From contig JAWQFM010000023.1 of assembly GCA_033442325.1 (NCBI GenBank), positions 628,410-692,409 of the forward strand: DNA of 64,000 nt, read 5' to 3'. This DNA is from Salpingoeca rosetta (lineage: Eukaryota > Protista > Choanoflagellata). Below, piece by piece: positions 35,801 through 56,042 of this stretch; position 1 is the first letter of the stretch, and each line of letters opens with the position of its first letter. The position numbers were made by a program, and so were the translations under genes. Below the pieces are notes generated by a model. The model was not told the DNA's origin. It searched no databases and worked only from the letters and a program-made list of their open reading frames with translations.

Positions 35801-38800
35801 GGCCTCCACATCAATGGTGAGCGTCGTCCGCGGCTCTTGTGGCTCGGGTGGCAGCACCGCCACCAGGTTGTTCTTGACCGACGACAGGCTCGCCTGCTGG
35901 CGCAGTGTCGCATAGACGGGGTCAGCCTCCACCCACGTTGTTGCTGTGGTGTCCGTGTTGGCATCCGTACTGTTGGCGGCGGCAGCGTCTGCGGTGACTT
36001 GCAGGGCCGCCGTGATGCGAATGGATTCGCTCGAGCCCGCGTCGACGACGGAGAACCAAGATGAAGGCACCGTCAGCCGCAGCAGGCACGATCCCGTTTC
36101 CTGCGACGTGTTGCACGCGGCCGTGAAGTTGCTCGGGTCCAGCGTGCTCGCCGTCACCGGCATGTGCACCACAACGCGAACGCTGCGCACAGCAGCGCGC
36201 GGGTTACCATCGGGTCCCCGCACGTGTGCGAACAGCACAATCTCGTCTCCGGTCGACCACACTTCACCTTGCAGCAGGTCGACAACCACGTATTCTGTGG
36301 AAGCCGACGTGCTGTTGCCGCTCCCGCTCGAAGAAGCGTTGGGTGCTGAGGAAGGCGACGACGAGGATGAGAGGGGAGGCAGGGCAACGTCAAGGGCGGC
36401 GCTTCTCTCCCCGATACTCGCCTCCACTTCGGCGCGCGTATCACTGAAGGAGAGGGAGGTGAGGGCCTGCGAAATGCTCAGCGATGCGCGGGACGGTGTG
36501 CCCTGGAACGCAGCCACGCTGGAGCGCAGCATGGGTGCCACCACATCCGCCACAGTCAGCTCGATTGTGGTCTGTACAGATTGCCGCACGCCAGCCACCT
36601 CCGTGTCGGTGGCCTCCACAACGACGCGCTGTGTTGGCACACGCGACGTCCCAGACACATTGAACAGGACCTGGCCGTCTTGCAGCACAATGAGGGGTGC
36701 GCTCCCACCGTTGTCTGCGCCACTGCTGCCGCCTACAACGGCAAATTCGACCGCGTTGTTGCCAGCCACATCTGCATCTGCCGCAGTGAGTTGGGCGAGA
36801 AGCGTGCCAACACGCGTATCCCAAGGCACAATCAGGCTCGCGTTCACAGAGGCAGGGGTCAGAACAGGCAGGTTGTCGTTGAGGTTCACAACCTCGATGT
36901 CCAACTGCAAGAGCGGTGACTGCAGTGCAGGATCGCCCATGTCCACAGCACGCACGCTGCAGGTAATGGCCTGGACCTGCTCATAGTCCACGTCAGCAAC
37001 GCGCAGCTCGCCCGTGGTCGCATTCAAGCTGACCAGGGACGGGTGCGACGCGCTCTCAAGCACAAACCGCACTTGTCCCCGCGGCCCAGAGTCCGCGTCT
37101 GTGCTGGTGAAGGTGGTGAGCAACACCCACTGGCCCGCGTTCTCGCGCACGAGCAGCTGCGTGCCGTTGGCAGAGCGCAACGTCGGTGCGTTGTCGTTGA
37201 TATCCGTCACTGCAAGTGTGATGGGCACAAGCACCGTGTGCGCTGATGCATCATCGTCGCTGTCACGCACGCGCACTTGCACAGTCACCGAGGGTCCTGT
37301 TTCTTCGTAATCCAGCGGCGCTGTCAGGAACACGTGCCCAGTGCTGTTCACGCTGAAATAAGCGCCCGCAGCAAACCCTTGGTACACGGGCACGATGGTG
37401 AAGGAGAGTTGAGTCACCGCAGCGCTGTCTGCGTCCTGCACCACCAACGCGGCCACGAGCAGCGGCGTGCTTGTCGCGTCTGCTGGCAGCGCCGTGAAGT
37501 TTTCGCTGACAGCGGTGACACGCTGCTCCACACGGGTGATGTTCGGTGCGTTGTCGTTCTCATCCTGCACATTCACAACCACGTTCAGGTCTGTGGTGAC
37601 CTGCTGCGGCGATCCGTCATCGCTGATGCTGAACCCGAGCGAGTACGACTGCGTTGTCTCGTAGTCGAGAGCACCCGCAATAACCACGCGCCCATCTGCT
37701 GTCAGGCTGAACGCTGGCGGCGCAACGCCGGTTGCCCGGTCAACGAGATCAAAAAAGGTGAGGACCGTGTCGACTGCATCCAAGTCGTGCGCCTGAATCG
37801 TGTCCACAACATCGCCCACCTGCGCCAGCTCAGACACGGGCGCCAGCACCTGGCCTGGCACATCGAGCTCTGGTGCAAAGTCGTTGGTGTTGACCACGGC
37901 CACCGTGGCGTCGATGGTGAGGCTGCGAATCGCGGGCTGCGTCATGGTGTCCTGCACGAGGATGCGAAGCGAGTACGAGCTTGCGGCTTCATAGTCCAAG
38001 CTCTCTGTTGTCTGCACAACCACCTCAAACGTGGCTGCGTCCGTCTGGTTCACAGTCACGGAGAACGCTGACGTGCCAGCGACGACAGCACCCGTTGGTG
38101 GCGTGTCCTGCTCATCCACGGCCACGATGATCAAGCCAGTGCCGTCCATGGGCACAACGAGGCCGCCGGGGCCAGGGTCCTGGTCGCTCACGACAGCACG
38201 GATAACAGTAACGCCGCTGCCGGCATTCTCTTCCACGGGCGTCTCTGTGAGGGAGACGAGCGATGGCGTGACGTCGTTCACGTTGCCAATGCTGACAGCG
38301 ATTGTGGCCGTGTCTGTGAGCGCAGGGTTGCCCGTGTTGCTTGCAAGCACCTGAATAGTGTAGGACGCCTGTGCTTCGTAATCCACGCCATCACCAACAA
38401 GCATCACCTCGCCGGTGACCGACGAGACAGTGAACAGGCCCTCGCCAGACACAGGGTCCACGCTCTGCACGGTGAGCGCGGTGTCGCGGAAACCTGGCGT
38501 GACATCCGCATCGTCCACGTGCAGCGTGGCAATGACAGTGGGCGTGCTCACGTCCTCGGACACAGACACCGCGATGGACGTGTTGGCAAAGCGGGGCGGC
38601 TCGTCGTTGACATCTGTCAGCGACACAATCACAGGGACAGAGGTCGACATGCCCTGGGCGCTGCCGCTCCGGTCCGTGGCCACCAAGGTGAAGTTCCACA
38701 CCTGCTGCGTGTCAAAGTCAGTCAGGCTGCCGTCCACATTCAAGTACACGATGGTGCGTCCACCGGCTTGGAAGGGCTGCACGGTGAAGGGGAAGTTGGG

Positions 38801-39583
38801 GTTGCCTGTGGCCGCGGGGATGGCTGGGCTGATGGCACGGTTGGTGCCGCTGTCAGCATCAGACACGGTCATGACCAGCAGCGGCTGGCGCGTCACGCCC
38901 TCAGCCACGGATATGCTGTACTGGGCTGCGTTGAACACGGGCGCGTTGTCGTTGATGTCGCTGACAAACACGGAGAATGTTGTGGTGCTGGCTGCCCCGT
39001 CTTGGTCCTCGGCAATGAGGGTGACGCGATAGGTGCTGATGGTCTCCCTGTCCAGCGACAGTTGCGTTGCCAGCGTCACCTCAACGTTCCTTGCACCGTC
39101 GGCAGTGATGTCGTCGTCTGTGACAGCGAGCGCAAAGGGCTCTGCTCCGTTCAGGGGCACTTGCACACCCAGCGGCGACGTGGCGCGCACGTTGCTGATG
39201 CGCACAGTCATTGTGTTAAAGGGCTCCCTGTCTGCGTCCTGAAAGATGGCAGTGCCAACAAGCTGTCCTGCATCCTGCTCCTCGGCCACAGAGAAGCTCG
39301 TGGTGTCCGAGATGAGCGCTGGTGTGCGGTCGTTCACCTGGGACACCGACACACCGACGCAGACAGCATTGGAGATCAGGCCTTCTTCATCACGCACGCG
39401 CAGTTCTACCGTGCGCGTGCCCGTCTGTGGCTCGTCGGCACTGTCCTCAAACGTGACGCCAGCAATTGCTTGCATCAGGTCATCCACGGTCGCACCGTCG
39501 CTGAGCTCCAGCGTGTAAATGCGCGCCGCACCACCGCCACTGGGCAGTGTCGTGGTGGTTGTGGTGGTCTTCAGTGCCGGCGC

Positions 39584-39658
<75 letters not shown>

Positions 39659-42600
39659 CGTCGTCGTCGTCGTTGTTGTTGTTGTTATTTGCTCACGTGG
39701 GAGCAAGCAAGGATCAGCGGTGATGGTGGACACGGAGACCGAAGATGCAGGCAACGATGACAGCAGCTGCTCCTCAGTCACGGCATCCAAAATGCCTGCA
39801 AGCACCAGCTCAATGCTGGCCACGCTTGCGCTGTCATCCCAGAACGCCAAGTTGGAGACGTTGACGAGTGACACAGGCGCCCCACCCTCCACAAAGGCAG
39901 GCTGGGCGCCACGTGGTGCCAGCGTCAGGATCGGTGCGTCGTTGACAGCTTGCAGCTGCATGTGCACATCCACGCGCGTGCGTCCACCCTGCGCGTCTGT
40001 GACACTCAGCTCAAGTGCGCGGCCGCTGTCAACGTCTGTCAACTCACCAGCACCGTCCACATAGAACAGGCCGTCGAGTACGAGCTCGTACTGTCGGAGC
40101 GTGGCGATGCCAGACACGCGCACAGCGTGTGTGCCGTTGCCCGAGAACGACATGGCACCACCCTCAGCCTGCAGCAGCTGCCAGGCTTGCTGGGTCGGCA
40201 GCAGGAGCAAGGCTTCATCATCGCCATCACGCGCATCCAGAAGCTGCAGCACAGCGCTGGAGAGCCTGCTCGAGTCCACATCGCTGATGCCAACGCCACT
40301 CGGGAACACGGCCGCAGGCTCACCCTCCTCCGCGTACGTGCCAGCACCGCCAACATCCACAACAGGAAGGTCGTTGACACCGACAAAGTTGATGCTGACA
40401 CGCGCAACTGCGCTTGCAGCGCCTTGGTCGTCCTCAACCTGCACGGCAATCTCCCGCGGCTGTGTCGGTGGCACATCAAAGCTGTGCGCGTACACAAGCG
40501 ATTCAAGTACGCGCGTGAAGTCAGCGAGGGAAGCGGTGCCGTTCACCACCAGCGTGTCCTCGCCCATCTGCGTCACGGCCACGCCGGCTGGAAGCGGAGT
40601 TGCGTCAATAGCGATGGTCTCCGTTGCATTCTGGCGACCGTTCAGCCACACGCGTGCGTATGACAGTGTTGCAGAGTCCACGTCCTCCAACACCAGGCCA
40701 GCGAGCGGAGCCAGGCCTGACTCTGTCTCGTTGTAGGTAACGCTTGCTGCTGCCACCGTGGCCACGGGAGCGTCGTTCATTGGTTCCACCACCACGGTCA
40801 GCACGGCCGCCTGTGATTCCCCAACAGCGTTGAAAGCTGGTTGTTGTTGTTGATTGGTGGTGGTGTGTGTTTGTGATTGGTAAGGTGAAGGCGCAAAATA
40901 CGTTGCACAAGCAGGTATCACGTTGCAACCAACAGAGCACACACACACGCACAAAAAAAAACCGATGTTCTGGGATACACTTTGCAACATAATCACACAT
41001 GCATATGCGTGCACGTGTGCATACTCGAATGTGCTTACCTGTGATGCGGACAGCAACAGGTACTGGAGCGTCGTCGAGGGGAGCAAACGTGATGCTCTGC
41101 AGAACTTGGTTGTACATCGCCAAGCCGGCAGCACCCGTGACGACGATTTGCATCTGGGCGCTGTCGCACGACACACCACTGGTACATGTCACAGCCAGTG
41201 CGTTGGTCTGCGGTGGAGAGCTTGCCTCGATAGCCACACGCAACTCTGGCAACGAGACACAGGTGCACAGCCATCACAGAGATCAAATTGGGATGGAAGC
41301 ACAATCGAGAGGCCGACGCGGGTCACCATGAAACAGACATGTACAAACAAAACACACGACGACATGTGCACATAAATACGCACACGTCCACGCACACGCA
41401 CACGCACACGCACACGCACACGCACACGCACACACAGACACAGACACACAGGCACAGGCACACGCACACGCACACGCACACGCACACACAGACACAGACA
41501 CACAGGCACACACACAGACACAGACACACAGGCACACGCACACACACGGACACACAGGCACGCACACAGACACGCGTGCACACACTAATCCCCCTCCCCA
41601 AAACACACCTGTGATGTCCCAGGTCCCCGTGTCCTGGTCGATGATGGCAGCGCCAGAGAAAAGGGCGGCTGGGCTCTGCTGCTCTTGCACAGTGGCTGTG
41701 ATATTGATGCTGGAGCCAGCAGCATCCAGCAGCACAAGCGGAGGGTAATCTTGCACAAGGTCAATGACGATGGTGGTGTTTTGCGACGTGGTGTACAGAC
41801 CGTCAAAGACCGTTACGACCACACGGCGTGTGGCGGCAGCGGGCTCATCCGCGTTGTCCACATACGTGATAGCCTGCAGCAGTTGCTCGTACACGGCCAA
41901 ACTCGCCTCTCCCGCAATGGAGACGGTGTGGTTGCCGTCTGAGAACCACACACGAACACCGCTGTTCGCGGCCGCTGCATCAACGGCGGCCTGTGCGATG
42001 CCAAGCTGCTCCCCATCGCCAACACCATCGCTGTCCCCAACGAGAGCGACGGTCGCCCACTGCAGCACCTGGAAGTCCGCATCGCTGTCCGACACACCAA
42101 CACCGGGCAGCACGACGATGGCTGGCGTGTTCTCCGTGTACGCTACATCCGACAGTCCTGACAACATGGGCGCGAGTGTGTTGGCGTCCTTAACAACCAC
42201 GCGAACCGTCGTAGTGCCCACAAAGGATGTCATGACTTGGTCGCGCGCCTCTACCACCACATCGTATTGTGCGGCAACGTCCACATCCAGACCCTCTTCT
42301 GCCACTGTCAATCGCCCGGACACCGCGTCCAAGGCAAAGAAGCGCGGTGGCGATGAGCCAGCAAGGGAATACAGCACGGGCGAGGCCACAGCGTCCGCGT
42401 CCGTGGCGGTGATCACGCCAATCAACTCGCCAACCGACGCGGTCTCAGACACGTTGTAGATGAGCGCGCCGGGCGCGGGCAGCTGTGGTGGCGAGTCGTT
42501 GACGTCCTCAACGGTGATGCGCAGTACCGCCGTCGTGCTGAGGGAGACGGGCGTGCCGTAATCCGCAACGACAACCGTGCATTGCAGAGTGGGCTGTTCC

Positions 42601-45600
42601 TCCCGGTCAATGTCGGCTGCCACCGTGACGCTGCCGCTGGTGTCGATGCTCACAGCAAGCACGCTTTCTCCGCCTTGTTGCACGAGGCAGTTTGTCTGGT
42701 TGTCGGCCGACAGCTGGAAACGCACACGCGCATTGTCGCCGCCGTCTGCGTCTGTTGCCTGCAGCTGCGTGATTGGCGTGCCAATCTCGCTGTTCTCCGT
42801 CACGCGCGCCGCAAACGAGGACATGACGGGCTCTGGCACGTTGTTGTTGACGTCCACAACCATCACGGTCACCGACGCAGACGACGCCAGCGCTGCGTCG
42901 TGGCTGTCTGTGGCGATGAGCGTAATGTCGTAGCTCGTGCGAACACTAAAGTCCAGCGGCGCCAGCAGCACCAGCGCGTACGATGTGTTGGCAAACGCAA
43001 ACACCGTTGACGGTGCGCCCGTGTCATCATCAAGCACCTGCACCACAAACGCGTCAAAGGGGGGCGAGTCTGCGTCCACAATGACCAGCGGAGCCGTGAA
43101 GTTGGTGCCCACAGCGTGATCTTCGTACACACTCAACGTCAGCGGCGGCTGCACAAACTGTGGCGCCTCGTCGTTCCTGTCCAGCAGTGTAATCTGCACT
43201 GGCGCTGTCACCGTGTGCACGCCGTCGCTGACAACGACAGTTGCGGAGAATGTTGGTGATGCGACTGCTTCAAAGTCAAGCTGCCCAGCCACGCGCAGGT
43301 GTCCAGTGGCGGCGTCAATGGAAAAGGGCACAGCCGGCTGTGATTCCAGCGAGAACGACAGCGGCGACACGACGGCGCCGTCTGGATCGCTCGCATTCAC
43401 CTGTAGCACTAGCGTGTCCACGGGCGTGTTCTCGTACACGCTCGCTTGCAACACGCCGCCAGCACCAACCCCAATCACAGGCTGCTCGTCGTTCACGTTG
43501 ACAATGTCCACAGTCACAGTGATAGTGACGGGTGCCCCGGGTGCGGGGCTTGCCCCCTCATCTGTCAGCACAACATCAAACACGTCCGGGGTGGCGTCTG
43601 CCTCGTAATCAACACCGCGCGCGAGTGCGAGGGATCCGTCATTCAGCAGTGAGACGAACCGCGGTGCTTCGCCCGTTGCCAGCGCATAGCGCACACGCCC
43701 GTTTGCGCCTGCGTCTGGGTCTGTAGCACCTAGCGATGCAAAGACAGCGCCAACTTCTGCGTCCTCGCGCACGTTGTAGGTGGGTGTGGTTGTGCCACCA
43801 GGCAGGCGCGGGTTGTTGTCGTTCACGTCGAGCAGCGTCACCAGCACAGTGGCGGCTGCCGTGTCCCCGCCAACATCCTGCACGTACACAGTGAGGTTGA
43901 ACGCGGCATGCGCCTCACGGTCAAGGGGCGCAACAACGCGCAGCGCACCCGAGCTCACGTTCACGGCAAGCGACTCCGTTGCGTCGAGGAACACGTCGCC
44001 GTCACGCCGCCCCAGCTCAATACCAAAGAAGAGGACGGGCGGGATTGGCGCGCGACCACCGTCAGCAAGGCCATCGCCGTTGGAGTCGTGGTCCGGGTCC
44101 GACACATTCAGCTGCAGGAGCTGCGTGTTCACCTGCACGGCCTCGCTCACGTTGAGTGCAAAGGTGGGGTGAGGTGCCGGCGTTGGCGTGCCGTCAGCGG
44201 TGAGGAACACGGGCACCTCATCCTGCAGGTTGTTCACGTTGACCACGACGCTGATGAACGACGTGCCGAGCGACGCGTCGAGGGCATCCGTCAGCGACAC
44301 GACAAGAAAGTACTGCGGCTGCGTCTCGTGGTCAAGCGGCACCGTTGTGGCGAGCGTGCCGTCCTGGGCGATGCTGAACTTGCCCTGCTCGTCGCCAGCA
44401 GCGATGGTGAAGCTTGCGATGGAGAATGCGTCGGAGTCGCGGTCCTCAAATGGAAGCGCGCCTACCTCGCCCACCACGCCTTCGTCCACGGAGAACGCCA
44501 GGTTGGTGTCGAGGAAGGCGGGCGCGTTGTTGTTGACGTCTTGGACGCTGATGCGGTGGGTGGCGTGTGTTGACCACCGCCCGCCGTCGCGTGCCGTGAC
44601 GTTCACCCAGTATGCGTTCTGCTCGGTCCAATCCAGCTTCTGCGCCACTTCCACCGCGCCAGTGGCCGCGTTGTAGGAAAACGCTGTCGTGGGGGTGCCG
44701 TTGCCGTCAGCTGCACCGCTGCCAGCAAAGAACGCAACATCCACGTCAGGCGGGGAAGCAACACCCTGTGGGCCTGCATCCCGATCTGTTACGACAATGG
44801 TCAGCACCACGGTGCCAATGCTTGCATCCTCGCTGACGCTGGCGGGGCTCGTCGGCGGGTCGAAGACAATCTCGGGCGCAAACTCGTTCACGTCCTCCAC
44901 GTCCAACGTCACGCTGATGGGCACGGAGTGGACACCATCAGACACGACGACGGTGACCGACCGCTGTGCATGCTGCTCATAGTCAAGGGCGCCCGCAAGG
45001 GCGACGCGAAGCAGCGCATCTGAGGCCGTGGCCTCACTGCCGTCGTCGAAGCTGTTGTCAACCTCAATGGAGAAGAGCGCATCGCTGTTGCCAATGACGG
45101 TGGCCACGGCAAGGTCGGTGTCCTGGTCGGCATCGTGCAACTGGAAGGAGGCAAGCCAGACGGGTGGCGCCACGTCTTCGCGCAAGGCAAGCGACGCCGT
45201 CGTGGCGTTGGTCGTTGGCGGGTTGTGTTGATGTCCGTCACAAACACCTCAATCAGGCCGCTGGTGGCCTGGCTCGGCGAGCCGCCATCCCTGCACAGCA
45301 CATGCAAGAACGCCGACTGGAAGCCGAGCTCGTAGTCGAGCGTCTGCAGCAGATACACGCTGCCATCGGAGCCGATGCCAAAGGACCCAAACGACGTGTC
45401 CAGAAGCAGCTGGAAGCCAACAATGGCGCCGTCTGCACCGGCATCTGCGTCCGTGCACGTCACGGTGGCCACGATGCTGCCGGGTGTCGTGTCCTCCCTC
45501 ACGTAGATGGTGTGCGGGTCAACAAGGACGGGCACGTTGTCGTTGGATTGCTGCACATCCAGCTGCGCGTACACGTCTTCACTCTCCAGGCCATCCACAT

Positions 45601-46821
45601 CCAACGCGCGCACCGCCACCGTGCGCACGCCGGGCGTGGGCTCTGCAAGCTCGTTCCTGTAGCGCACAAAGCCAAGCACGGTCGCCGCCTCCACGAGCGA
45701 CGCGGGGCGGCGGAACTGCACAAACACCTCCATCTCGCTGGCGCTGGGACGGGTGCTGTCCACATCCACATCAAGGCCAAGTGCCCAGGCCACGCCTTCC
45801 TCGTCCACATACAAGCCTTCGTCGCCCGTCACATCCATCATGTCGCCATCACTGCTGCCATCGCCAGTGTCGCGGATGTTGGAGAGATGCAGCCGCAGCC
45901 CTGCCAGTGGTTGGCCCTCCGAATCGGAAATAAAAGGGCGCGTGATAATGTCGGACACCACAAGCGCGTCGAGCTCAGTGGCAGGAACGGCAATAAACGC
46001 GTAGGCGTTGCGGCTGCACGCCACGACGTTGGCGCATGTGCCTGGGATGGCGCTGCCAGAGTCGCGTGGAAACACGCGTACATACTTCACGCCGGCCGTG
46101 CTTGTGGGCAGCACGAACGAGGAATCTGTCGCCAGGCGCACGGTCCCGCTCTCAACAAAGGATGAAGGGTTGCCGCTGCTGTCGGTTGACGTGGCACGGT
46201 ACAGGCTGATGCGATAGGCGACGGTTGCGCGCTGGGTGCCCGAAACCGTGCCGCGCACAGACCCAACAAATGATGGGCTGTTCGCGCGGTTGAAGGCAAC
46301 GGTGATGTTGTCAAACCGAGAGATGTGGCTTATCTGCGGTGCTGTGCTGTCGGGCACGCGCACGGAGAACCCGCTGCCCACCGTAAACGCATCCAAATCC
46401 AACAGGGGTGGATCGTTGGTGTTCACCACAAGCAGACGCGCAGTGAAGGTGGCGGACACGGCCTGGTGCGTGTCAATCACTTGCACGGTGATGGTACGCG
46501 TGCCTGCGGTGGGCTCCGCACGGCGGTTTGCGTACGCGATGGAGCGGAGGTACGCCTGTGCCTGCGCTGGTGTCATCACCCCCTGCCGCAGCAGTGCCCA
46601 TGACGTGTCGCCAACTTGTGGCTCAAACTGCGCGTCTGCATCCAGCATGGAAAACACCTCCTGCTGCCCGCCATCAAGCAGGCCGCCCACAACCACGCGC
46701 AGCGCCAGGATGTTGCTGTCCACGTCCTCCACCGTGATGCTGGGCAGGAGCAAGAGCGGATCACCCGCGTCGTCGTGGTCCTCCACATACGTGTTGGCGA
46801 GGATTGACATGCTGCTGCTGC

Positions 46822-46861
<40 letters not shown>

Positions 46862-49800
46862 GCCACTGCCATCGCCAGTGGAGTGCTCCCAGCCAACAAC
46901 GGGTGCGGAGTTGACGCCAGAGAAGGCGATGGTGACACCTGCGCTGTTGCTGGTGTCCTCGCCATCAGAGGCCGTGACGACCAGCAGCGTCTCCACGCTC
47001 GGGGCAACCGAGAAATCGTTGTTGTAGGTGACGAGCGAGGCCACGGCTTCCTCAAACACAGACAGCGGTGCGGGCCCACGCAGTATGAGGTGGGAGGCGC
47101 TCACACGTTCAAGAGACAGCGGTGAGGAAGCAGCGCCCGATGACGAGAAGTCCAACTGCTCGCCGGACTTGAGCGTGCTTGAGATGCGCACAGCAACCCA
47201 GGTCAGGTTGGCACTGTCGCTGTCCGTGATGCGAAGCACGTTCTGCAGCGGAAGCACGGCACCATCGCCCTCCCGGTACCGAAATGCAATGTTGTCTCCA
47301 TCCGGGGACCCCTCCCGTGCAAACAGCACAACTGGAGGGTCGTTCACCAGCGTCACGCCAACCGTCGTCGTGGCAGGCACAGACCACACACCAGAGGTGG
47401 CAGCTGCCTGCACAGATGACGAAGACGAAGACGATGACGACGAAGAAGCATCGACCATGCTCTGCTGCTGTTGCTGTTGCAACACCCGAATGGTGACACG
47501 ACGAGGTGTTGGGGTGGGCTCATCCACCCTGTTGACATACACGACACGGTTCAGTGCGGAGAGCACGGCTGAAGCAGACGCGCTGCTGCCTTGCTGCTGT
47601 TCTTGCTGCTGCTGTTCTTGGTCAAACACCAGTTCGAGCCGATGCCACGACCCATCAGCGGCAAAGGACGATGAAACGGTGAATGGGTCGGCAGAACCGG
47701 CGTTCATCACTTGCAGGCGATCGCTTCCGCCTTCAAGATCATCCAGCCTGTTCTCCAGTGTGAGCATGGCGCGCGTGTATGCGGGGTTGGGCGCGTTGTC
47801 CAGCGACAGGAGCCGCGTCGTTTGCAGCGGTGCCACGCGCACGCCTTGCTCGCTGCCTTCGACAAACTCCACTGTTGTGTCCACGAGCCACTGCAGCGTG
47901 TCTGACGCCAGCGGGTCTGCTGATGCGCTCAGGTCCAAGATGGGCCGTTCATCCAGCACGGGCGTGACGCGCACGCTGACACGCCCCAGCACAGAGCCGA
48001 CCCCGCTGCTACCGTTACTACCGCTGTCACTGCCACCAGCATCAGAGCTCGACTGGGCAGGAGAGGAAGTGGCGGCGTAAACAGTGACCGTGCGCAATGC
48101 GAGGTGCGGCTCCACAGCCGTGTTGGTGAAATGCAGCGCGCGCAACACACGCTGTGCTTCATCGAGGGAGGCGAGGTTGGTGATGTTGACGGCATTACCG
48201 GCGAGTCGCTGCACGCGCACGCTCGCGAGCGCGCTTTCATCGCTGGCACCACTCAACACGGCAACCAGCTGGCCGCCACAGGGGCTGGCGGAAGCGCACT
48301 GCACGGCGCGCACCACATCCGCAGCCGTGGTCGTCTCCCCGCCAACGAGTGCGACATCGGTAATGACGGCACCTGTGAGCGATGACGAAGCAGCAGCGGG
48401 CGCTCCGCCCAAATACAGCGGGCCAGGTGCGTCTTGAAGTGCACCCGCAGACACACCAGCCACGTCTCTGGTGGACAGGACAATGGCCGTGGCTTCGTCC
48501 ACGACTTGCTGTTGGACCCGTGTTGCTTCCAGCTGCCACGAGGGGGAGGAGAATGTCGACCAAGCGCCTTCACCGACACCCGCTTCGGCGTTGATGTTGG
48601 CTGCGATCAACACTGGCGGCTGCGCCTCCCCGGGTGTTGTTGACGAGAAGGCGACGATGGCAAAGTGCTCTGGCAACAGCGCGTCCTCTGTGTCACCGGC
48701 ATTGCTTGGCAGTTCAAAGGTGACAATGTGGCGCAGGAGCTGGCCGCTGTCGACGCTCGCAGTGTCACGCGCTTCCATGGACACACGCAACAGCCATGAG
48801 TCATCACCAACATCAGGGGCAACAACAGCCATGTCCAGCACGAGCCGGCCATCAGCTGCCTCCTTGCGCAGCAACGTCCCCGCGGTGCCTGCAGGCAACG
48901 CCGCGTGCACCCAAATGGCAAGCGGCCACGCCCCGTCGTCACCAGGAAGCTCCTGCGCTTCTGGGCGGAGCGCATCGCTGTCAAACGTCACAAAGGCGCT
49001 TGCGTCACCAACACCACCACTTGCTTCGCCATCACTAACGGTGAACGGCAGGTCACTGTCATAGCTCCATGATCCAAACAGCACATTCGTGTTGTTGAAC
49101 ACGGACGCCGCTGAAGCCACGCCGCACTTGCGGGCCGTGGTTGGGAGCAAGCGGCGACGATAAGGCGGTGTTTGAGCGCAGTCCAGCTGTGTGGTGGGAT
49201 CCAGTTCACCCGCCGTTGTTGCGCTGCTGCCGGCTATGTGCGCGCACACAGCAAGCCAGAACACGGAAGATGGCGAGGAGTCTGCATCTGTGAGGCGCGC
49301 ACCATCAAAGAGCGGCACAGGCGCGGCGTTCTCGCCATAGGTGATGTTGGCGTTGTCGGAAAGCCACAAGACAACTGGGTTGTCGTCGACGTCGGTCACT
49401 TGCACGCGAACGAGGACGTCTGTAGATTGGGGTTGCGGGATGCCGTTGTCGCTGATGCGGATCACAAACGCATGAGACGTTTCTTCCTCAAAGTCCAAGC
49501 CATCCCCGGCAACAACCAGGCTGTTGCCCTGCACATCAAACGGCACAGTGACGCCAGGATTGGCCTGCAAGGAGAACGACAGCACGTCGCTCGTGTCTGC
49601 GTCGACTGCATTGATCACATGGACGGTGGTACCAATGGGTGTGTTCTCCTGAACCGCAAAACGAATGCTTGTGCTTCCATCAGCAAGCATGGGGGCGTTG
49701 TCGTTTGCGCCATCCACGTTCACCACCAGCGTGTAGTACGCCATTTCCTCTCCAGTTGCATCCCTGATGGCAAGCAATGCCTCGTGCCGCCACTCCGACT

Positions 49801-52800
49801 CGAAATCAAGTGGTTGCTTCAACACCATGGACCCGTTGCTCAGCACCACAAACGGCGCGTCGGTTGCGGACGACGCATTGACAACGGAAAACCACAATTG
49901 CTGGCCCTGGTCCTGCTGCTGCTGCTGCTGATTGTCCTGTGTGTCTGGATCGGTGGCGACAAAGGCGCCAAGAGTCACGCCAGTCTTGAGCGCTTCCGTT
50001 GCGTTGATTTCGATGCGTCCAAACAGGGACGGGGTGCCATCGGCAGCACCCTCACGCGTGCGCGGTGGCTGATATTGCTGCACAGCAGCAGCGGACACGG
50101 CAGGCGCAACAACGGGGACGCTGGTGGCGTCTGGTGCATTGTCGCGGAGGCGTGTGTTTGGTTCGAAGCGCAGCAGGCGGGGCGGCTCATCCTCAATGTT
50201 GGTGATGTTCACACGCACGCTGATCAGGGAGGAGAGCTGTGGTGTGCCTGCGTCCTGTGCTCGCAACCGCGCGCGGATGTGGGTGGTTGTCTCGTAGTCA
50301 AGCACGCCAACAACCACCACGCGCAGGGTTGTGGTGGACACGGCATTTGCGCCCGCCTGCCGCACATCAGCAACGTGCAGGGCAAGGTTGTCGCTGGCGG
50401 GCGCATCTTGATCAACTGCCAGCAGGGAGAAGGAGAGACGAGAGTTGTTGTAGGATGCGTCTTGATCCTGCACCACCACGGTCGCGCAGACAAAGGCATC
50501 GTTGCTGTCCGCGGTGGTTGTGTACACGCCCTCTGGCAAGACACAGGCAATCTCGCCCACGCTGAAGGCTGGCGCGTGCTCGTTCACATCCTGGACGCGC
50601 ACGCGCAGGGCTGCATACGCAGGAAGCGGCTCGCTGCTGCTATCAACCGCAACGATGGTCACGTTGTAGAGCTGGACAGCCTCATAGTCAAGCCCGGGTG
50701 CGGTGATTTCAACGGCGCCCGTGTTTCGGTCAATGCGGAAGGGAAGTTGCGTTGCAGACGCGGCATCCCCCTCAGCCACCGTTACCCACGCAGGTGTCTC
50801 GCCGTGGCCAGTGCTTGGAACGCTGCTGGCAGCGACGTATGCACGCCAGGCGCCAATGTGGTACGTGACGTCTGCGTTTGGTGCCGTGTCCAGGGTGTCC
50901 ACTGCAGAGAAGTGTGCCACCATGGTGCCAATGGCGGTTGACTCTGGCACTTGCACACGCTCCTCATCGCTGTCGAACACGGCAGCGTTGTCGTTGATGT
51001 CGAGGACGTTGACGGTAACATTGACGCTGGTGGCACGCGGTGGAGTGCCGGCATCGGTGACGGTCACCGTCAGGTGGTAGCGGGTCGGGTTGCGGTTATC
51101 ACGGTCCAAGCGCACGTCATTGCGGTACAGCGTGCCGTTGCTGGCGTCGATGTTGAATGGCAGAGAAAGCGCATCGCCTCGTCCACCATTGAGTGAGTAA
51201 GCGATGGGGACGACACCCGTGACTGGGATGTAGCCTGTCGCAGTTGTGATGCCAAACGCCAAGCGCCCGTTGTCACCGGAATCAGGGTCCGAAACACCAA
51301 CAGCGCCCACACGGGTGTTGGTGGGTGTTTCTTCCGCCACGTCAAACTGAAACGACGGCTGAACGGATGCAGGTGCGTGGTCGTTGATGTCATTGACGGT
51401 GACGGTGACACGAAGGCTCGTCTGCTGTGGTGGAAGGCCGCGGTCTGTTGCCGTGACGACAAGCTCAAAGGCGTGCGGGCCTGTTTCATAGTCCAGGCGG
51501 CGCGCAAGCTCAATGGCATAGCCGTTGAGTGTAAAGTACGCCTCATCATCGTCAGCACCACCACCACCACCCGCACCACTACTACTACTACTGCTGCTGC
51601 CACCATTCCCCACGTCGGTGATTGTCTGTGTCAGTGCAAGGTCAACCTCGCCAGCGGCGCCAAGGTCTGCATCCTCGACGCTCTGCAGCGTAACGACGCG
51701 ACCGCGAACAGGCGATTCCTCGTCAATGGCCAGAGAAAAGTCGGCAGATGGGGTGATTTGGGGCGCGTTGTCGTTGATGTTGAGAACACTGACAGTGAGC
51801 GCGGATGACGTTGTCACGCCAGCACCAGCAATGCTCGCCTGCACAGAGAGGATGTACCGCTGCCTGAGCTCGTAGTCCAAGCCTGCGCTGCCAACCACAA
51901 CGCGGGCAGTGCCTTGCTGTGTTGATGGGTCAGCGTTGGCTGCCTCGTCAACAACAATGTCGAAGGGTGCTGCTGCGTCATCAATGGCAAAAGCCACTTG
52001 CAGGGCAGGGTCAGGGCCGAGCACGTTGTAGGGAGAGGAGAAGGTGATTTGGGCAACAAGATTGCCCGCGTCTGCCGCCTCGCTCAGCTCGACGGTTGCT
52101 GGCGTGATGGTCAGAGTGAGGCACTCATCGCCACACGGGCTGCACAACACGCCGGCACCATCACCATCACCAGCAGCATCGTCGGTCGGGTAGAATCGAG
52201 GCGGGCAGGTGGCAAGGCAAGTGCCGTTGGCCAAGTGGACGTTGGCGCATGATGCGCAGTCACTGGCGGTGGGGCCGGTGCAGCCGCCCTGGCATTGTGG
52301 GTGGCAGGGTGTGCACCCGTTGGTGGGGTCGCTGCCAAAGCCAAAGGTGTCTGGGGCGCACTCATCGCAGGAGAAACCACGCACGTTTGGCTTACACGTG
52401 CACGGGTCTGCCCCGTCCTCCGCACTGCACACGGATGCCCCATCCACTGTGCCTGTTGGATTGCACGTGCACAGCTCGCAGCCATCTGGGTTGCTGGCTT
52501 GCAGGTTGACAAACCCAGGGGCACACGTGTCGCACTTGATACCAACCACGTTCTGCTTGCAGGCGCACTGGCCCGAGCCCTGCTGGCACGTGAACGCGCG
52601 CGAGCCCCTCGCGTCGCACGCACACGGTTCACAGGGGTCTGTGCTGTTGATGGCGACGTTGCTTGGCAGGTAGTAGGCATCGGCGCACTGACCGCATTTG
52701 GGCCCTGTGGTGTTGGCGCCGCAGTCAACGCACTGGCCACCGCCAGACAGGTTGCTCGTGCCCGACTGCCCGGCGAGTGTTGCATTGAACATGCACGCGT

Positions 52801-54906
52801 TTGCGTGGCCGTTGCACTCACAGGGCTGGCACTCGAATGATGGCTGGTCGACGATGGAGGGCTGCCACTGTGCGTCATTGAGGAGGGTGTCGCACTCGGT
52901 GCACGCCGTGCCCGTGGTGCCATGCTCGCACTGGCACGCAAAGCCCGTTTCCGGCCCGCACACCTCCGCGTGTCCGTTGCAGACGCACGAGCCCGCGACA
53001 GCCACGTCACGCAGGGCGTAGTAGCGGCCCTGCTGCAGGCTGAGGAAGCCATCGAGAATGCCGTGATCCAGGAAGCGGATGCGGATGCGCCGTGCCTGCG
53101 AGAGTGCAAGCAGGGTCTCGCTCGCTTGCCAGGTGCTGACGTCACCGGCAGCGGCCAGCACGCGCGCGTCTGTGAAGGGCGTCAGGGTCACGGTGCGCTG
53201 GAGGCCGAGCACAGCCGGGATGCAGATGAGTGGAGAGCCGCCGTCAAGCAGCGGCGTGGACACGGCAGGTTCAGGGCATGATTCCCGCACAGCGACGATG
53301 TGGCGGTAGCTGGTGTCGCCACTGTCGCCGTCAGCGCCACTGGGTGAAGAAGTTGGGGAGAAGAGGATGTCGTAGGCGCGTGGCGAGTAGCCCTGGAACT
53401 TGAGGGTGATGGCAGTGACATGCTGCTGCACGGGCAAGGTGAGGGTGAGGTTGACCTGATCGATGCCCCGTGGCGCCTGCCAGATGGTGGTTGGATCCTC
53501 ATCCAGGGCAAACTCCGGGTAGAACGCGCCCGTGCCCGTGCGAATGCGAGCTGTGCCGCTGATGCCCTGGCCCTCGCTTGCTGCGGTTGCGCACTGCGTC
53601 GCGTCCGCGCGCAGGAGCAGCGGGTAGGTGCGCGGGCACAGGCACGTGCTTGCAGGCAAGCGAGCGCCGCCAACAAGCGCAGTCAGCGCCGGCTCGGTAC
53701 GGAGGGCGGCCGTGCTCAGGCTCGCTGCCTCCTGCTCCACAAGTGCGGCGTCTGCCGCCATGACACTGGCCAGCGTGCCCATGTAGTTGTCCTGCGGCGC
53801 GACTCCAGCTGGAGTTGCACCAAGGAAGAGGCGGTCTGGGCCACAGATGCCAAAGGACTGCAGGATGGGCACGCAGCGCATGAAGTCTGGGTAGGTGGGC
53901 AGTGCCGCTGTTGCTGCAAAGGCACCGTCCACGTAAGCGGTGGCCCGCAGCTGATGCAGGGCAAACACGAGGTGGTGCTCTGCGCCATCGTACAGGGAAG
54001 AGGGAATGGCGAGCGGCACGCTGAACTCTTGCAGCTGCCGGCTGTCCACAAACGCGGTGTACTGCAACACGAGCCGCTGCCGTTGCGTGTCCACCTGCAA
54101 CTCAAATACCAGCTCGTCATCCTCCGTATACACGCCAACCAGCGGCCTATTGAATTTCAGGCGGGGGAAAGCATGGATGGAGGTTAAGTGAGCATGTGCA
54201 TGTATGTGCATGTGTGTGTGTGTGCGTGTGTGCGTTCGTGCATGTGTGTGCATGTGCATGTGTGTGTGTGTGTGCGTTCGTGCATGTGTGTGCATGTGCA
54301 TGTGTGTGTGTGTGTGCGTTCGTGCATGTGTGTGCATGTGTGTGTGTGTGCGTTCGTGCATGTGCATGTGTGTGTGTGTGCGTGAGCATGTGCATGTGTG
54401 TGCGTTCGTGCATGTGTGTGCATGTGCATGTGTGTGTGTGTGTGCGTGTGCGTGAGCATGTGTGAGTGTGTGTGTGTGTGTGTGTGTGCGTTCGTGCATG
54501 TGTGTGTGTGCGTGAGCATGTGTGAGTGTGTGTGTGTGAGTGTGTGCGTGGGTGCGTTCGTGCATGTGTGCGTTCGTGCATGTGTGTGTGCATGTGTAAT
54601 TGCAATAGAGACGGTCTCTGCGTCGGGGAGGTGGCATGAAAGCAAACAACAGAGGGCAAATGGATTATATTGCAATTGCTTTGCATGCACGCACAGACGT
54701 GTTGGGTGGCACGTGTACCTTGAGTCGAAAAACGATGGCGTGAGCGCGAGGGAGAAGGCAATTGAGGGCACGGTGGGCAGGGAGAACGACTCGTCCAAGG
54801 GGATGGAGTACACCTCCGTGCCATTCAAGGTAACGCGCTCCTGTGCGGGCCAAAACAAGGAACAGGGGCAAGAAACGTGAGACACTGTTGCAAAGGAAGT
54901 GTGTGT

Positions 54907-54971
<65 letters not shown>

Positions 54972-55312
54972 GATATTGGGTTATCATAGGCTCTTGGCCC
55001 TCCATCCAGGCTCTAACAGGACAGACAACAAGCTTGGGGGCCTAGTCGAAGCAGCTAAAGGATGCATTAATATTGTGATGTTTACCTCCTGAGGGCTGTT
55101 CTGTACTTATTGCCCTTTGAAACAGTCTCACCGATAATACCCCCCCAGGGGTCGGGCCGTCAGCATAGCGATTTAGTGTGAAATACTGTCAATGACCCCC
55201 TAGATGGACTCATTTCCCCGCCTCCTTTCAGGAACGATTATCCCCCAGTTTTATCCCGAGTGCCTCTTTCTCATCGCATTGTCGGGCGGCCCGTGACCTG
55301 AGTGTAGTAGAG

Positions 55313-55386
<74 letters not shown>

Positions 55387-55617
55387 CCTGACTGCATGTC
55401 TCAGCGAAGTGACGAGTTCAATGAATGTCAAGCAGTGTGCGAATCAAAGCGGTTTGTAGGACTTGATGCTCGCAGCACTTGGGTGGAAGAGGGAAGATCA
55501 GAACTGAACTGCACGAGTGCATGCAACCGCGTGTACACGACACTTGCACATGTGCATATCATGTGCAAACTTGTGCATCCGTGCTTGCACACACACAAGC
55601 GTATGTGTACGCCCATG

Positions 55618-55659
<42 letters not shown>

Positions 55660-56042
55660 GCGCTCACGTTTGGAATTCCGGCAAGGGGAAAGAGGGGCGT
55701 GAGCTGTGCTGGGATCTCTGTGTTGGGACAGTCGTTGTTGCACACGCGAGTCTGGGAGCAGCGCAGAGGGTTGCTTGCAAGTTCGCAGTAGTCTGTTGCA
55801 GCATCACTGGTGCCACACGTGGCTGACGCCTCGATGCTGCTGGCGTAACGTTCGAGGTGTGCTGTGGCTTGGGGGAACGCTGGGTTTGGCACCTCTGCCG
55901 CCACGGCACACAAGCACGTGCTGGTGAGCAGCGTGACAGCAGCCAAGAGCAAGAGTGCTGTGGCAGCGGCGCGGCGTCGTGCCGTGGACACGAAGCCATG
56001 AGCCGCCGATGTTCTTGCCATCAAACGCTCACGTGGCCGCAT
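20987..56042 (-). CDS. Giant lefftyrin-type cadherin receptor (~10,800 aa after correcting one frameshift): signal peptide, LamG/Laminin-N, laminin-EGF, furin-like repeat, cadherin repeats, TMEM132-like and cohesin/dockerin modules, FN3, TM, inactive PTP domain
   Basis: Phase-consistent exons: 56021 (or 56042)-55668, possible micro-exon 55508-55479, 54840-54719, 54146-41609, 41245-41039, 40836-23962, 23665-23469 (TM: [19 protein letters not shown]), 23182-20987. These sum to 32,520 nt including one restored base. Dozens of DxNDNxP / LDxE / AxDxD cadherin motifs. The LamNT-EGF-furin N-terminal cassette plus FN3-TM-PTP C-terminal cassette matches the described lefftyrin family of choanoflagellates and sponges. 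Confidence 0.9.
21690..22400 (-). other. PTP-like domain of the giant cadherin, predicted catalytically dead
   Basis: Recognisable PTP motifs are present ([37 protein letters not shown]). The signature reads [11 protein letters not shown] (~21860-21890) instead of VHCSAGxGR, and there is no WPD loop. Confidence 0.85.
32300..32505 (-). other. Dockerin-like domain (two Ca2+-binding loops) within the giant cadherin
   Basis: [21 protein letters not shown] ... [21 protein letters not shown]: duplicated DxNxDGxxDxxD loop-helix motif typical of dockerins. Confidence 0.8.
34360..36290 (-). other. TMEM132-like cassette (conserved region + cohesin-like + Ig-like domains) within the giant cadherin
   Basis: [13 protein letters not shown] (~36051-36090), RLINTYSLT, and [24 protein letters not shown] resemble recalled TMEM132 motifs (C..EL...SSWF; ILNTAxLTG; CxSSDEDVxKVSxxCDxVFVNG). 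Confidence 0.7.
39585..39690 (-). repeat. Coding trinucleotide repeat giving a poly-Thr tract in the cadherin ectodomain (also poly-Ser ~34620-34710 and poly-Asn ~46823-46861)
   Basis: (TTG)n/(TCG)n on the + strand, in frame within the long cadherin ORFs. Confidence 0.9.
52190..54146 (-). other. N-terminal LamG-like + Laminin-N + laminin-EGF repeats + furin-like repeat of the giant cadherin
   Basis: [21 protein letters not shown] (LamG-like). [37 protein letters not shown] (LamNT end). [23 protein letters not shown] (laminin EGF). [20 protein letters not shown] (furin-like). Confidence 0.9.
54970..55314. mobile_element. Candidate ~345-bp insertion inside a (GT)n microsatellite in a 5' intron of the cadherin gene
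   Basis: Non-repetitive, TA-dinucleotide-rich segment with sharp borders, flanked on both sides by pure (GT)n. No TIR, poly-A or ORF recognised. Confidence 0.35.

What the first reader, a model, noticed from the sequence alone, without database searches (positions are those of the whole stretch)
52980..55900. Usherin-like head: Laminin-N domain interrupted by a LamG-like fold
Seen: after the signal peptide, FP..ATCG..DYC..RC..CNNDCP, then LamG-like sequence, then [28 protein letters not shown]. This parallels the recalled USH2A order (FP..VCG..FC..C..CIQDCP-[LamG-like]-CRCPGSHP..YC..RL..HPLSFVNDNDxxTSW). Inference: one protein combines usherin-, calsyntenin- and TMEM132-like cassettes with cadherin stalks. 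Usherin and cadherins link hair-cell microvilli, so this is a candidate inter-microvillar link of the choanoflagellate collar.
Basis: partly seen in the sequence, partly recalled or inferred. Interest (0 to 1): 0.72.

Follow-up and report, generated by a model that had tools for sequence, protein, structure and literature searches.

The report
Usherin-type split laminin head on cadherin
A giant choanoflagellate cadherin receptor starts with a laminin N-terminal domain that has a LamG-like domain nested inside it, as usherin does; this shows the head module predates animals, but its proposed role as a collar link between microvilli is untested.

Summary
On the minus strand, exon 1 (56021..55668) encodes a signal peptide and the first ~55 positions of a laminin N-terminal (LN) domain. 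Exon 2 (54840..54719) and the start of exon 3 (from 54146) encode a ~200-residue LamG-like domain. The LN domain then resumes at CLCPRTYP.

Pfam Laminin_N matches exon 1 at profile positions 11-56 and exon 3 from position 57. A profile of the N-piece hits only the extreme N-termini of solved laminin and netrin LN domains. The gap between the two pieces is 227 residues here, 213-233 in fish and sponge usherins, and 17-20 in unsplit choanoflagellate relatives. The insert is homologous to usherin's LamG-like domain (hhalign 97.6%).

The gene is not an usherin orthologue. It continues as 4 laminin EGFs, a furin-like region, dozens of cadherins, a TMEM132/dockerin cassette, FN3, a TM helix and a PTP-like domain. 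That is the lefftyrin-type cadherin architecture. A separate usherin-like gene (split LN, LE, VWA, FN3) lies on another contig of the same genome.

The LN tree excludes laminins only weakly and cannot place this divergent copy. The collar-link role remains speculation. No RNA evidence could be obtained, and the joined spliced protein was not searched or folded.

The parts
55896..56021 (-). Start codon and predicted signal peptide (first 42 codons of exon 1). Upstream in-frame ATGs exist.
   Evidence: Read from the translation: basic n-region, Leu/Ala-rich core, AVA|AE. Judged by eye; no signal-peptide predictor was run.
55668..55895 (-). LN domain N-piece (rest of exon 1): FP..TCG..YC..C..CNNDCP, ending at donor AAC|gtgagc (phase 0).
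   Evidence: Pfam Laminin_N profile 11-56, E 2.2e-4, is the only family hit. It aligns with N-pieces of usherins and unsplit relatives. The N-piece profile hits only LN N-termini in PDB.
54841..55667 (-). Intron 1 (CA-repeat rich).
   Evidence: Stops in the coding frame; GT..AG borders.
54719..54840 (-). Exon 2: 40 codons plus 2 nt, encoding the first strands of the LamG-like insert.
   Evidence: Canonical acceptor and donor with phases that fit exons 1 and 3. It is 53% identical (E 1e-15), with the same splice phase, in TARA relative L010 276-395. An usherin LamG-like profile did not detect it significantly.
54147..54718 (-). Intron 2 (CA/CAT repeats).
53651..54146 (-). Remainder of the LamG-like insert (exon 3 residues 1-165), with an extra Cys-containing loop.
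   Evidence: hhalign to usherin LamG-like domains 97.6%, E 4.5e-12. Pfam Laminin_G_3 E 0.02 and Laminin_G_2 E 0.13 are the only hits. ESM-Atlas nearest clusters are Laminin_G_3 at 0.97. AF2 strands have pLDDT 72-91 over residues 1-90.
52988..53650 (-). LN domain C-piece (exon 3 residues 166-386), from CLCPRTYP to just before CVCNGH. Strongly diverged.
   Evidence: Pfam Laminin_N profile 57-108. phmmer gives 443 LN-domain relatives. The AF2 model matches laminin alpha5 LN 2y38 at Z 17.3 and netrin-1 at Foldseek E 2e-14, starting at chain residues ~68-101, i.e. after the part covered by the N-piece.
52115..52987 (-). Four laminin-type EGF repeats followed by a furin-like / growth-factor-receptor Cys-rich region.
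   Evidence: Pfam EGF_laminin E 2.1e-24 (4 stretches) and GF_recep_IV E 0.005.
23957..52114 (-). Rest of the ectodomain in three giant ORF-exons: more than 40 cadherin repeats, TMEM132-type Ig, dockerin, FN3.
   Evidence: Pfam Cadherin E 1e-65 to 8e-284, Ig_TMEM132_4th E 3.3e-11, Dockerin_1 E 9.8e-4, fn3 E 8e-6. Introns between the ORFs were not mapped.
23559..23633 (-). Transmembrane helix on a small exon, followed by RAKKSK.
   Evidence: A 25-residue hydrophobic run in frame on the minus strand. Exon borders were not mapped.
21707..22375 (-). Cytoplasmic PTP-like domain lacking the catalytic Cys and Arg and the WPD Asp.
   Evidence: Pfam Y_phosphatase E 2.3e-34. The signature reads HD-ALGGG-L instead of HC(X)5R, and WPA instead of WPD.
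20987..21001 (-). Predicted C-terminus ..EDTAL plus the stop codon: a class-I PDZ-binding-type ending.
   Evidence: Tool-derived usherin (fish, sponge) and ADGRV1 C-termini end in DTHL. Conservation could not be tested, and an undetected 3' intron is not excluded.

Best explanation
This is the N-terminal head of a ~10,000-residue type-I membrane receptor of the lefftyrin type of choanoflagellate cadherins.

Shown:
- The head is a laminin N-terminal (LN) jelly-roll whose chain leaves the domain after its first ~55 residues, at ..CNNDCP.
- It then forms a separate ~200-residue LamG-like (ConA/pentraxin-type) domain and returns at CLCPRTYP.. to complete the LN fold.
- Four laminin EGFs and a furin-like region follow.
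- The same nested arrangement, at the same LN position and with a homologous insert of the same size, is found in vertebrate and sponge usherins. It is also found in a second, usherin-like gene of this genome and in environmental LamG+LN+LE+cadherin proteins.
- Other choanoflagellate LN-LE4-furin proteins have the two LN pieces 17-20 residues apart.

Inferred:
- The split-LN/LamG head is one pre-metazoan module. Domain shuffling placed it on different stalks: FN3 in usherin, cadherin in this receptor.
- Mechanistically, the head sits at the membrane-distal tip of a calcium-stiffened cadherin stalk. It acts as the ligand-binding end, with LN and LamG-like surfaces binding a protein or glycan partner on an apposed membrane, matrix or particle.
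- The cytoplasmic end is a catalytically dead PTP-like domain plus a ..DTAL tail. It most likely anchors to scaffold proteins rather than dephosphorylating substrates.

Whether the apposed surface is a neighbouring collar microvillus is not known.
For: - Split LN: Pfam profile coordinates are consecutive across exons (11-56, then 57-108). The same holds in usherins and the C3 paralogue and in C-pieces of relatives.
- The N-piece profile hits only LN N-termini in PDB.
- The AF2 model of exon 3 aligns to solved LN domains only from chain residue ~68-101 onward. This is complementary to the N-piece hits.
- Gap lengths are 227 aa here, 213-233 in usherins and 17-20 in unsplit relatives.
- Insert homology: hhalign 97.6%. 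The LamG-like assignment is supported (the sponge usherin model matches TSPN/pentraxin/ConA-like folds).
- Gene model: splice phases and a conserved exon 2.
- Architecture.
- Relatives with LamG+LN+4 LE+LamG+cadherin: P0002.
- Paralogous usherin-like gene.
- Tree: LamG-bearing cadherin-type LNs group with usherins at 84/85, and the laminin alpha/beta/gamma clade is separate at 83/97.
Against: - AF2 did not place the N-piece in the sponge usherin head (pLDDT ~30), so the physical docking of N-piece onto C-piece is inferred from homology, not modelled.
- The window's own LN C-piece is a long branch that the tree cannot place. By path length it lies as near to the unsplit furin-type LNs as to usherins.
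- A Savillea parva protein carries a different, LysM-like insert at the same site. The site therefore tolerates insertions, and convergence is conceivable.
- No transcript evidence for the junctions.
- The Pfam hits on the window's own pieces are each below the curated cut-off.
- The lefftyrin definition is from my memory of Nichols et al. 2012, which could not be read here.
Confidence: 0.75

Rival explanations
1. Convergence. The head descends from the unsplit choanoflagellate LN-LE4-furin family and acquired a LamG-like domain independently of usherin, at a loop that tolerates insertions.
For: - The window shares the 4 LE + furin-like continuation with the unsplit proteins of S. infusionum and Savillea parva.
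- In the trees the window pair lies next to or among these rows.
- Savillea P0217 has a LysM-like insert at the same site.
- The unsplit paralogue on C14 has a phase-0 intron exactly at the site, a ready entry point for exon insertion.
Against: - The inserts are homologous (97.6%) and of the same length.
- The other LamG+LN cadherin-type proteins group with usherins, not with furin-type LNs (84/85).
- Monophyly of all LamG-bearing cadherin-type LNs including the window is not rejected (AU p 0.125).
- The window pair's position is flagged as long-branch attraction by the tree tool.
Confidence: 0.17
2. Functional reading of the first reader: the protein is the inter-microvillar link of the collar, a counterpart of hair-bundle ankle links and shaft connectors.
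For: - S. rosetta has ~70 nm links between microvilli at the collar base whose composition is unknown (PMC4012994).
- Sponge usherin is choanocyte-enriched (PMC4942974).
- The protein combines an usherin-type head, FN3-TM-PTP-like tail and a ..DTAL end resembling the DTHL of usherin and ADGRV1.
Against: - There is no localisation or expression data.
- The published links resisted EGTA, which argues against a cadherin-dependent link.
- An ectodomain with more than 40 cadherin repeats would be far longer than 70 nm if extended. This estimate rests on my own figure of ~4.5 nm per repeat.
- The genome has a separate usherin-like gene that is an equally good candidate.
- The PDZ-type ending is not shown to be conserved.
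Confidence: 0.12
3. Artefact: exon 1 and exon 3 belong to different transcripts, so the 'interruption' is an accident of gene-model reading.
For: No RNA evidence could be obtained. The public gene model of the TARA relative starts inside the intron.
Against: - Half an LN domain on each side, on the same strand, with fitting phases.
- Exon 2 is conserved, with its splice sites, in the relative.
- The same order is contiguous within one exon in the C3 paralogue and in a complete sponge transcript.
Confidence: 0.03

Closest known systems
Usherin (USH2A) N-terminal head (LamG-like + laminin N-terminal + laminin EGF)
   Same: - The order is identical: signal peptide, FP..TCG..YC..C..CxxxCP, LamG-like domain, CxCPxxxP.., rest of LN, laminin EGFs.
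- Insert length is 213-233 aa in usherins against 227 aa here.
- The inserts are homologous.
- Both are single-pass membrane proteins whose predicted C-terminus is D-T-x-L.
   Different: - Usherin continues with 10 LE, FN3, 2 LamG, ~28 FN3 and a short tail. This protein has 4 LE, a furin-like region, more than 40 cadherins, a TMEM132/dockerin cassette, FN3 and a PTP-like domain.
- The LN C-piece here has lost several canonical blocks and carries FYPEF where usherins have HP.
- A better usherin counterpart exists on contig C3.
- The usherin literature I could read describes LGL and LN as consecutive, not nested, domains (PMC7317166, PMC10258241).
Lefftyrin family of cadherins (Nichols et al. 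2012 PNAS; defined from my memory, cited in PMC6030884 and PMC10084454)
   Same: An N-terminal LamN-EGF-furin cassette, long cadherin array, TMEM132-type cassette and C-terminal FN3-TM-tyrosine-phosphatase domain are all found here. The family is reported from choanoflagellates and sponges.
   Different: In what I could read, the family description does not say that the LamN domain is interrupted by a LamG-like domain or that it is of the usherin type. Here the phosphatase signature is degenerate. The protein also carries the cohesin/dockerin features of 'coherins' (earlier finding s1-432388).
Choanoflagellate LN-LE4-furin-repeat proteins (Salpingoeca infusionum P0003, Savillea parva P0211; own-genome gene on C14)
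   Same: The same N-piece and C-piece motifs (CxxxCP .. CxCxxxxP) and the same 4 LE + furin-like continuation.
   Different: The LN is uninterrupted, with 17-20 residues between the pieces. There are no cadherins. C14 has an intron at the site instead of an insert.
Laminin alpha/beta/gamma and netrin LN domains (solved: 2Y38, 4AQS, 4AQT, 4OVE, 8DMK)
   Same: The same fold. The window's C-piece model matches at Z 14-17 and the N-piece profile matches their first ~50-60 residues.
   Different: Their LN is contiguous. They form a separate clade (83/97), and joining the window to it is disfavoured (AU p 0.042). This protein has no coiled coil, NTR or laminin IV domains.

Membership tests
Usherin (USH2A orthologue) | LN domain with a LamG-like domain nested after its first ~55 residues, followed by laminin EGFs | tested here: met
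Usherin (USH2A orthologue) | Body of ~10 LE, FN3 x4, LamG x2, FN3 x~28 (Pfam content of the named usherins) | tested here: not met
   4 LE, furin-like, cadherins, TMEM132/dockerin, one FN3 region. The FN3-rich usherin-like gene is elsewhere, on C3.
Usherin (USH2A orthologue) | LN domain groups with usherin LNs in a phylogeny | tested here: inconclusive
   Window + P0001 form a long unresolved branch. Related LamG+LN cadherin-type rows group with usherins at 84/85. AU p is 0.125 for one cadherin-type clade.
Usherin (USH2A orthologue) | Short cytoplasmic tail ending in the PDZ-binding motif DTHL | tested here: inconclusive
   The predicted end is ..EDTAL after a PTP-like domain and a His-rich tail. 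The gene's 3' end is not verified.
Lefftyrin cadherins | N-terminal LamN - laminin EGF - furin-like cassette | tested here: met
   The family definition is recalled from Nichols et al. 2012, which was not readable here.
Lefftyrin cadherins | Cadherin repeat array | tested here: met
   Pfam Cadherin in every large ORF of the gene.
Lefftyrin cadherins | C-terminal FN3 - transmembrane - protein tyrosine phosphatase domain | tested here: met
   fn3 E 8e-6, TM helix at 23559-23633, Y_phosphatase E 2.3e-34. The catalytic residues are missing.
Lefftyrin cadherins | Orthology to the M. brevicollis and sponge lefftyrins named in the literature | not tested
   No named lefftyrin sequence was retrieved. 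Length limits of the word search exclude proteins over ~5,400 aa.
Laminin / netrin | Contiguous LN domain followed by LE repeats and coiled coil (laminin) or NTR (netrin) | tested here: not met
   The LN is split. No such downstream domains were found.

The most novel reading that the evidence does not exclude
This receptor is a component of the EGTA-resistant ~70 nm basal links between collar microvilli of the choanoflagellate. It may act together with the usherin-like protein on contig C3. Its usherin-type head, FN3-TM-PTP-like base and DTxL tail would make it a pre-animal relative of the hair-bundle ankle-link / shaft-connector system (usherin, ADGRV1, PTPRQ).
Probability: 0.1. Interest if true: 0.85.

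Novelty: new variant of a known kind. Interest (0 to 1): 0.5.

Why it matters
There are three consequences if the reading holds.

1. The usherin head is a nested two-domain module that existed before animals. It was shuffled onto different stalks: FN3 in usherin, cadherin in a lefftyrin-type receptor. This refines the picture that choanoflagellates have ECM domains but not their metazoan arrangements (PMC3308698).

2. The first ~55 residues after the usherin signal peptide belong to the LN domain. The usherin papers I could read treat LGL and LN as consecutive domains and use an LN-LE10 construct starting at residue 310 (PMC7317166). The nested reading changes domain boundaries for expression constructs. 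It also changes the interpretation of N-terminal missense variants in Usher syndrome.

3. It nominates two concrete genes for the unknown basal collar links of S. rosetta: this one and the C3 usherin-like gene. CRISPR tagging and knockouts are feasible in that organism.

Tried and rejected
- RNA support. The look-up of sequencing runs listed three raw RNA-seq runs.
- Joined spliced protein. It was never built, searched or folded. All searches were exon by exon, by reference.
- AF2 of the sponge usherin head. LamG-like and LN C-piece are confident, but the N-piece is unplaced (pLDDT ~30).
- Deeper alignment including tetrapod usherins. Structure prediction turned it away (rows 1, 2, 3 ...). Those rows were not sent to any other tool or used again.
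- phmmer of exon 1 alone against PDB: no hit. The profile search did hit.
- Usherin LamG-like HMM against the intron region: it did not pick out exon 2 (all E > 1). Conservation in the TARA relative did.
- Word searches with the window's head returned mostly laminins because of EGF words. The window's own annotated protein was not retrieved.
- Metagenome scan for relatives of the PTP-like tail: none found.
- Search of the own genome with the sponge usherin tail: only FN3 matches.
- Nichols et al. 2012 could not be opened. The supplement of Ozbek et al. 2010 listing choanoflagellate usherin homologues is not held.
- Rejected idea: that P0176 was a protist usherin. It is from the sponge Oscarella pearsei.
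Full report
**What is there.** The window (G000 contig C23:628410-692409) carries one giant gene on the minus strand, from about 56021 down to 20987. Its 5' end reads as three exons:
- Exon 1, 56021..55668, ends at AAC|gtgagc in phase 0.
- Exon 2, 54840..54719, is a short exon (acceptor cag|GAG, donor AG|gtacac, phase 2).
- Exon 3 starts at 54146 (acceptor aatag|G) and runs as an open frame for about 3,000 codons.

The phases fit. The introns are CA/GT microsatellite-rich.

I could not get transcript support. 

Comparative support exists. A TARA metagenome scaffold (L010) encodes the closest relative (P0001, 58% identity over the head). It has a 40-codon open stretch 53% identical to exon 2 (pairwise E 1e-15). 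The donor phase and the downstream acceptor are the same, and the surrounding sequence is repeat. The public gene model of that relative starts inside the intron and misses exons 1 and 2.

Every search and fold used single exons by reference. The search and fold of the joined product is left out.

**The LN domain is split.** Exon 1 encodes a signal-peptide-like start and then FP..TCG..YC..C..CNNDCP.
- Scanned alone, its only Pfam match is Laminin_N at profile positions 11-56 (E 2.2e-4).
- Exon 3 matches the same profile from position 57 (57-108, E 1.6e-3), but only after 211 residues of other sequence.
- Each hit is below Pfam's curated cut-off, yet the coordinates are consecutive and the pattern repeats elsewhere. 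The corresponding N-pieces match Laminin_N positions 2-57 in a fish usherin, 2-58 in a sponge usherin (27 bits, above cut-off) and 2-54 in a second gene of this genome.
- C-pieces of relatives start at positions 53-61.
- A profile of ten such N-pieces (A5), searched against all PDB sequences, returns seven hits and nothing else. All are the extreme N-termini of solved LN domains: laminin beta1 7-67, netrin-1 34-87, UNC-6 31-79, laminin gamma1 and alpha1.
- Conversely, an AF2 model of the window's exon 3 (residues 1-440, mean pLDDT 78.9) superposes on laminin alpha5 LN (Z 17.3), netrin-1, netrin-G and laminin alpha1. The match starts only from chain residues ~68-101 onward. The two halves therefore tile the solved domain.
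- The distance from CxxxCP to CxC is 227 residues in the window, 225-233 in three fish usherins and 213 in Oscarella usherin. It is 17-20 in unsplit choanoflagellate relatives.

What is missing is a model with the N-piece docked. AF2 on the sponge usherin head left residues 1-90 at pLDDT ~30. I did not send those rows anywhere else.

**The insert is LamG-like and homologous to usherin's.**
- The window's insert aligns by phmmer with environmental proteins P0002 and P0004 from residue ~45 on. P0002 and P0092 hit Pfam Laminin_G_3 (E 1.7e-6 and 1.7e-13).
- The window's own insert gives only Laminin_G_3 (E 0.02) and Laminin_G_2 (E 0.13).
- A language-model feature search puts it among Laminin_G_3 and pentraxin clusters (0.97, 0.95).
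- A profile of the cadherin-type inserts against a profile of usherin LamG-like domains gives 97.6% probability, E 4.5e-12, over 82 columns.
- The sponge usherin model's insert matches TSPN/NC4, pentraxin and other ConA-like jelly-rolls.
- The cadherin-type inserts share an extra Cys-containing loop that usherins lack.

**What the gene is.** After the LN come four laminin EGFs and a furin-like region. Then follow more than 40 cadherin repeats in three giant ORF-exons, a TMEM132-type Ig cassette, a dockerin and FN3. Next are a small exon with a transmembrane helix and a PTP-like domain (E 2.3e-34).

As I recall it from Nichols et al. 2012, this is the lefftyrin architecture: LamN, EGF, furin, cadherins, FN3, TM, tyrosine phosphatase. 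I could not open that paper. Papers that cite it confirm three points:
- Choanoflagellate and sponge cadherins carry LamNT, LamG, FN3 and PTPase domains.
- Lefftyrins, coherins and hedglings contain the TMEM132 cassette.
- These families predate animals.

It is therefore not an usherin orthologue.

The same genome holds a different gene on contig C3. There the LN N-piece and LamG-like domain lie in one exon, followed by CRCPASHP, the LN C-piece, five LE, a VWA domain and FN3 repeats spread over at least 22 kb. That is presumably the choanoflagellate 'usherin homologue' mentioned by Ozbek et al. 2010.

A third LN gene, on C14, is unsplit. It has a phase-0 intron exactly between the two pieces.

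**Phylogeny.** I built a maximum-likelihood tree of the LN C-piece: 47 rows, 227 columns, LG+C20+F+G4. The usherin rows were three fish sequences, the Oscarella sequence, a related unnamed protein (P0221), four unnamed usherin-like fragments and the C3 gene's C-piece. Tetrapod usherins and the C14 gene were left out.
- Laminin alpha, beta and gamma form one clade (83/97).
- The environmental LamG+LN cadherin-type proteins group with the Oscarella/P0221 pair and the fish usherins (84/85).
- The window and its TARA orthologue form a long branch (1.9 changes per column) that is not resolved. The tool flags it as meeting other long branches.
- Forcing all six LamG-bearing cadherin-type rows together is not rejected (AU p 0.125).
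- Forcing the window pair to the laminin clade is weakly disfavoured (p 0.042).

The stronger argument for common origin is the shared rare feature: the same domain family inserted at the same point with the same length. That argument is weakened by a Savillea parva protein carrying a LysM-like insert at that very point (LysM E 0.0015).

**Function.** Nothing here tests it. From established knowledge, LN domains are protein-binding heads (laminin polymer nodes, netrin-receptor contacts), and LamG/pentraxin-type domains often bind glycans or calcium. The head lies at the tip of a very long cadherin stalk. I therefore read it as the ligand-binding end of an adhesion receptor.

The cytoplasmic PTP-like domain has HD-ALGGG-L in place of HC(X)5R and WPA in place of WPD. 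It is most likely a pseudophosphatase that binds rather than cleaves.

The predicted C-terminus is ..EDTAL. Fish and sponge usherins and ADGRV1 all end in DTHL. This fits a class-I PDZ ligand, but I could not verify the 3' end or its conservation.

For the collar-link idea, S. rosetta does have ~70 nm links at the collar base of unknown composition. They resisted EGTA (PMC4012994). A stalk of more than 40 cadherins would also be much longer than 70 nm. I give the idea about one chance in ten.

**Novelty.** The gene family and the presence of LamNT on choanoflagellate cadherins are known. I did not find either of the following in the literature I could search:
- That this LamNT is of the usherin type, with a nested LamG-like domain.
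- That usherin's own LN domain begins before its LamG-like domain. Usherin papers draw LGL then LN, and one used an LN-LE10 construct starting at residue 310.

Domain databases or AlphaFold-based parsers may already show this; I could not check.

Noticed in passing
window 21650-22375 (-): The receptor's PTP domain lacks the catalytic Cys and Arg (HD-ALGGG-L instead of HC(X)5R) and the WPD Asp (WPA). It is probably a pseudophosphatase.
   Followed up: partly
window 20987-21001 (-): The predicted C-terminus is ..EDTAL, a class-I PDZ-ligand-like ending close to the DTHL that ends fish and sponge usherins and ADGRV1. Several choanoflagellate LN-furin proteins also end in S/T-x-L.
   Followed up: partly
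P0217 (Savillea parva) residues ~90-176: A different, LysM-like domain (Pfam LysM E 0.0015) sits at the same point of the LN domain where usherin and this cadherin carry the LamG-like domain. The site may be an insertion hot spot.
   Followed up: partly
L001 and L011 (G000 contig C3:365123-377999 and on to ~390700): A second split-LN gene in the same genome has an usherin-like body (5 LE, VWA, many FN3). Its N-piece and LamG-like domain lie in one exon. It is a likely choanoflagellate usherin homologue.
   Followed up: partly
L005 1088-1803 (G000 contig C14): An unsplit LN paralogue has a phase-0 intron exactly between the LN N-piece (..CNATCP..LLPQ) and the C-piece (PECGCPASYP..). This is the position of the LamG-like insert in the other genes.
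   Followed up: no
window 52988-53650 (-) and L010: The LN C-piece of this receptor and its TARA orthologue is strongly diverged. The canonical RS.DGG.TW..QY block is replaced and extended. The usual HP motif reads FYPEF, a change shared with all LamG+LN cadherin-type relatives.
   Followed up: partly
window 54147-55667 (-); L010 1-600: Long (CA)n/(GT)n-rich introns are read through as Cys/Val/His/Thr-rich 'protein' by ORF callers. The public model of the TARA relative starts inside such an intron and loses the first two exons.
   Followed up: yes
window 53800-53900 (-) approx. (exon 3 residues ~95-115): The LamG-like insert of the cadherin-type proteins has an extra loop with two conserved Cys (..C....C.PD..) that is absent from usherin LamG-like domains. 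AF2 confidence is low there.
   Followed up: no
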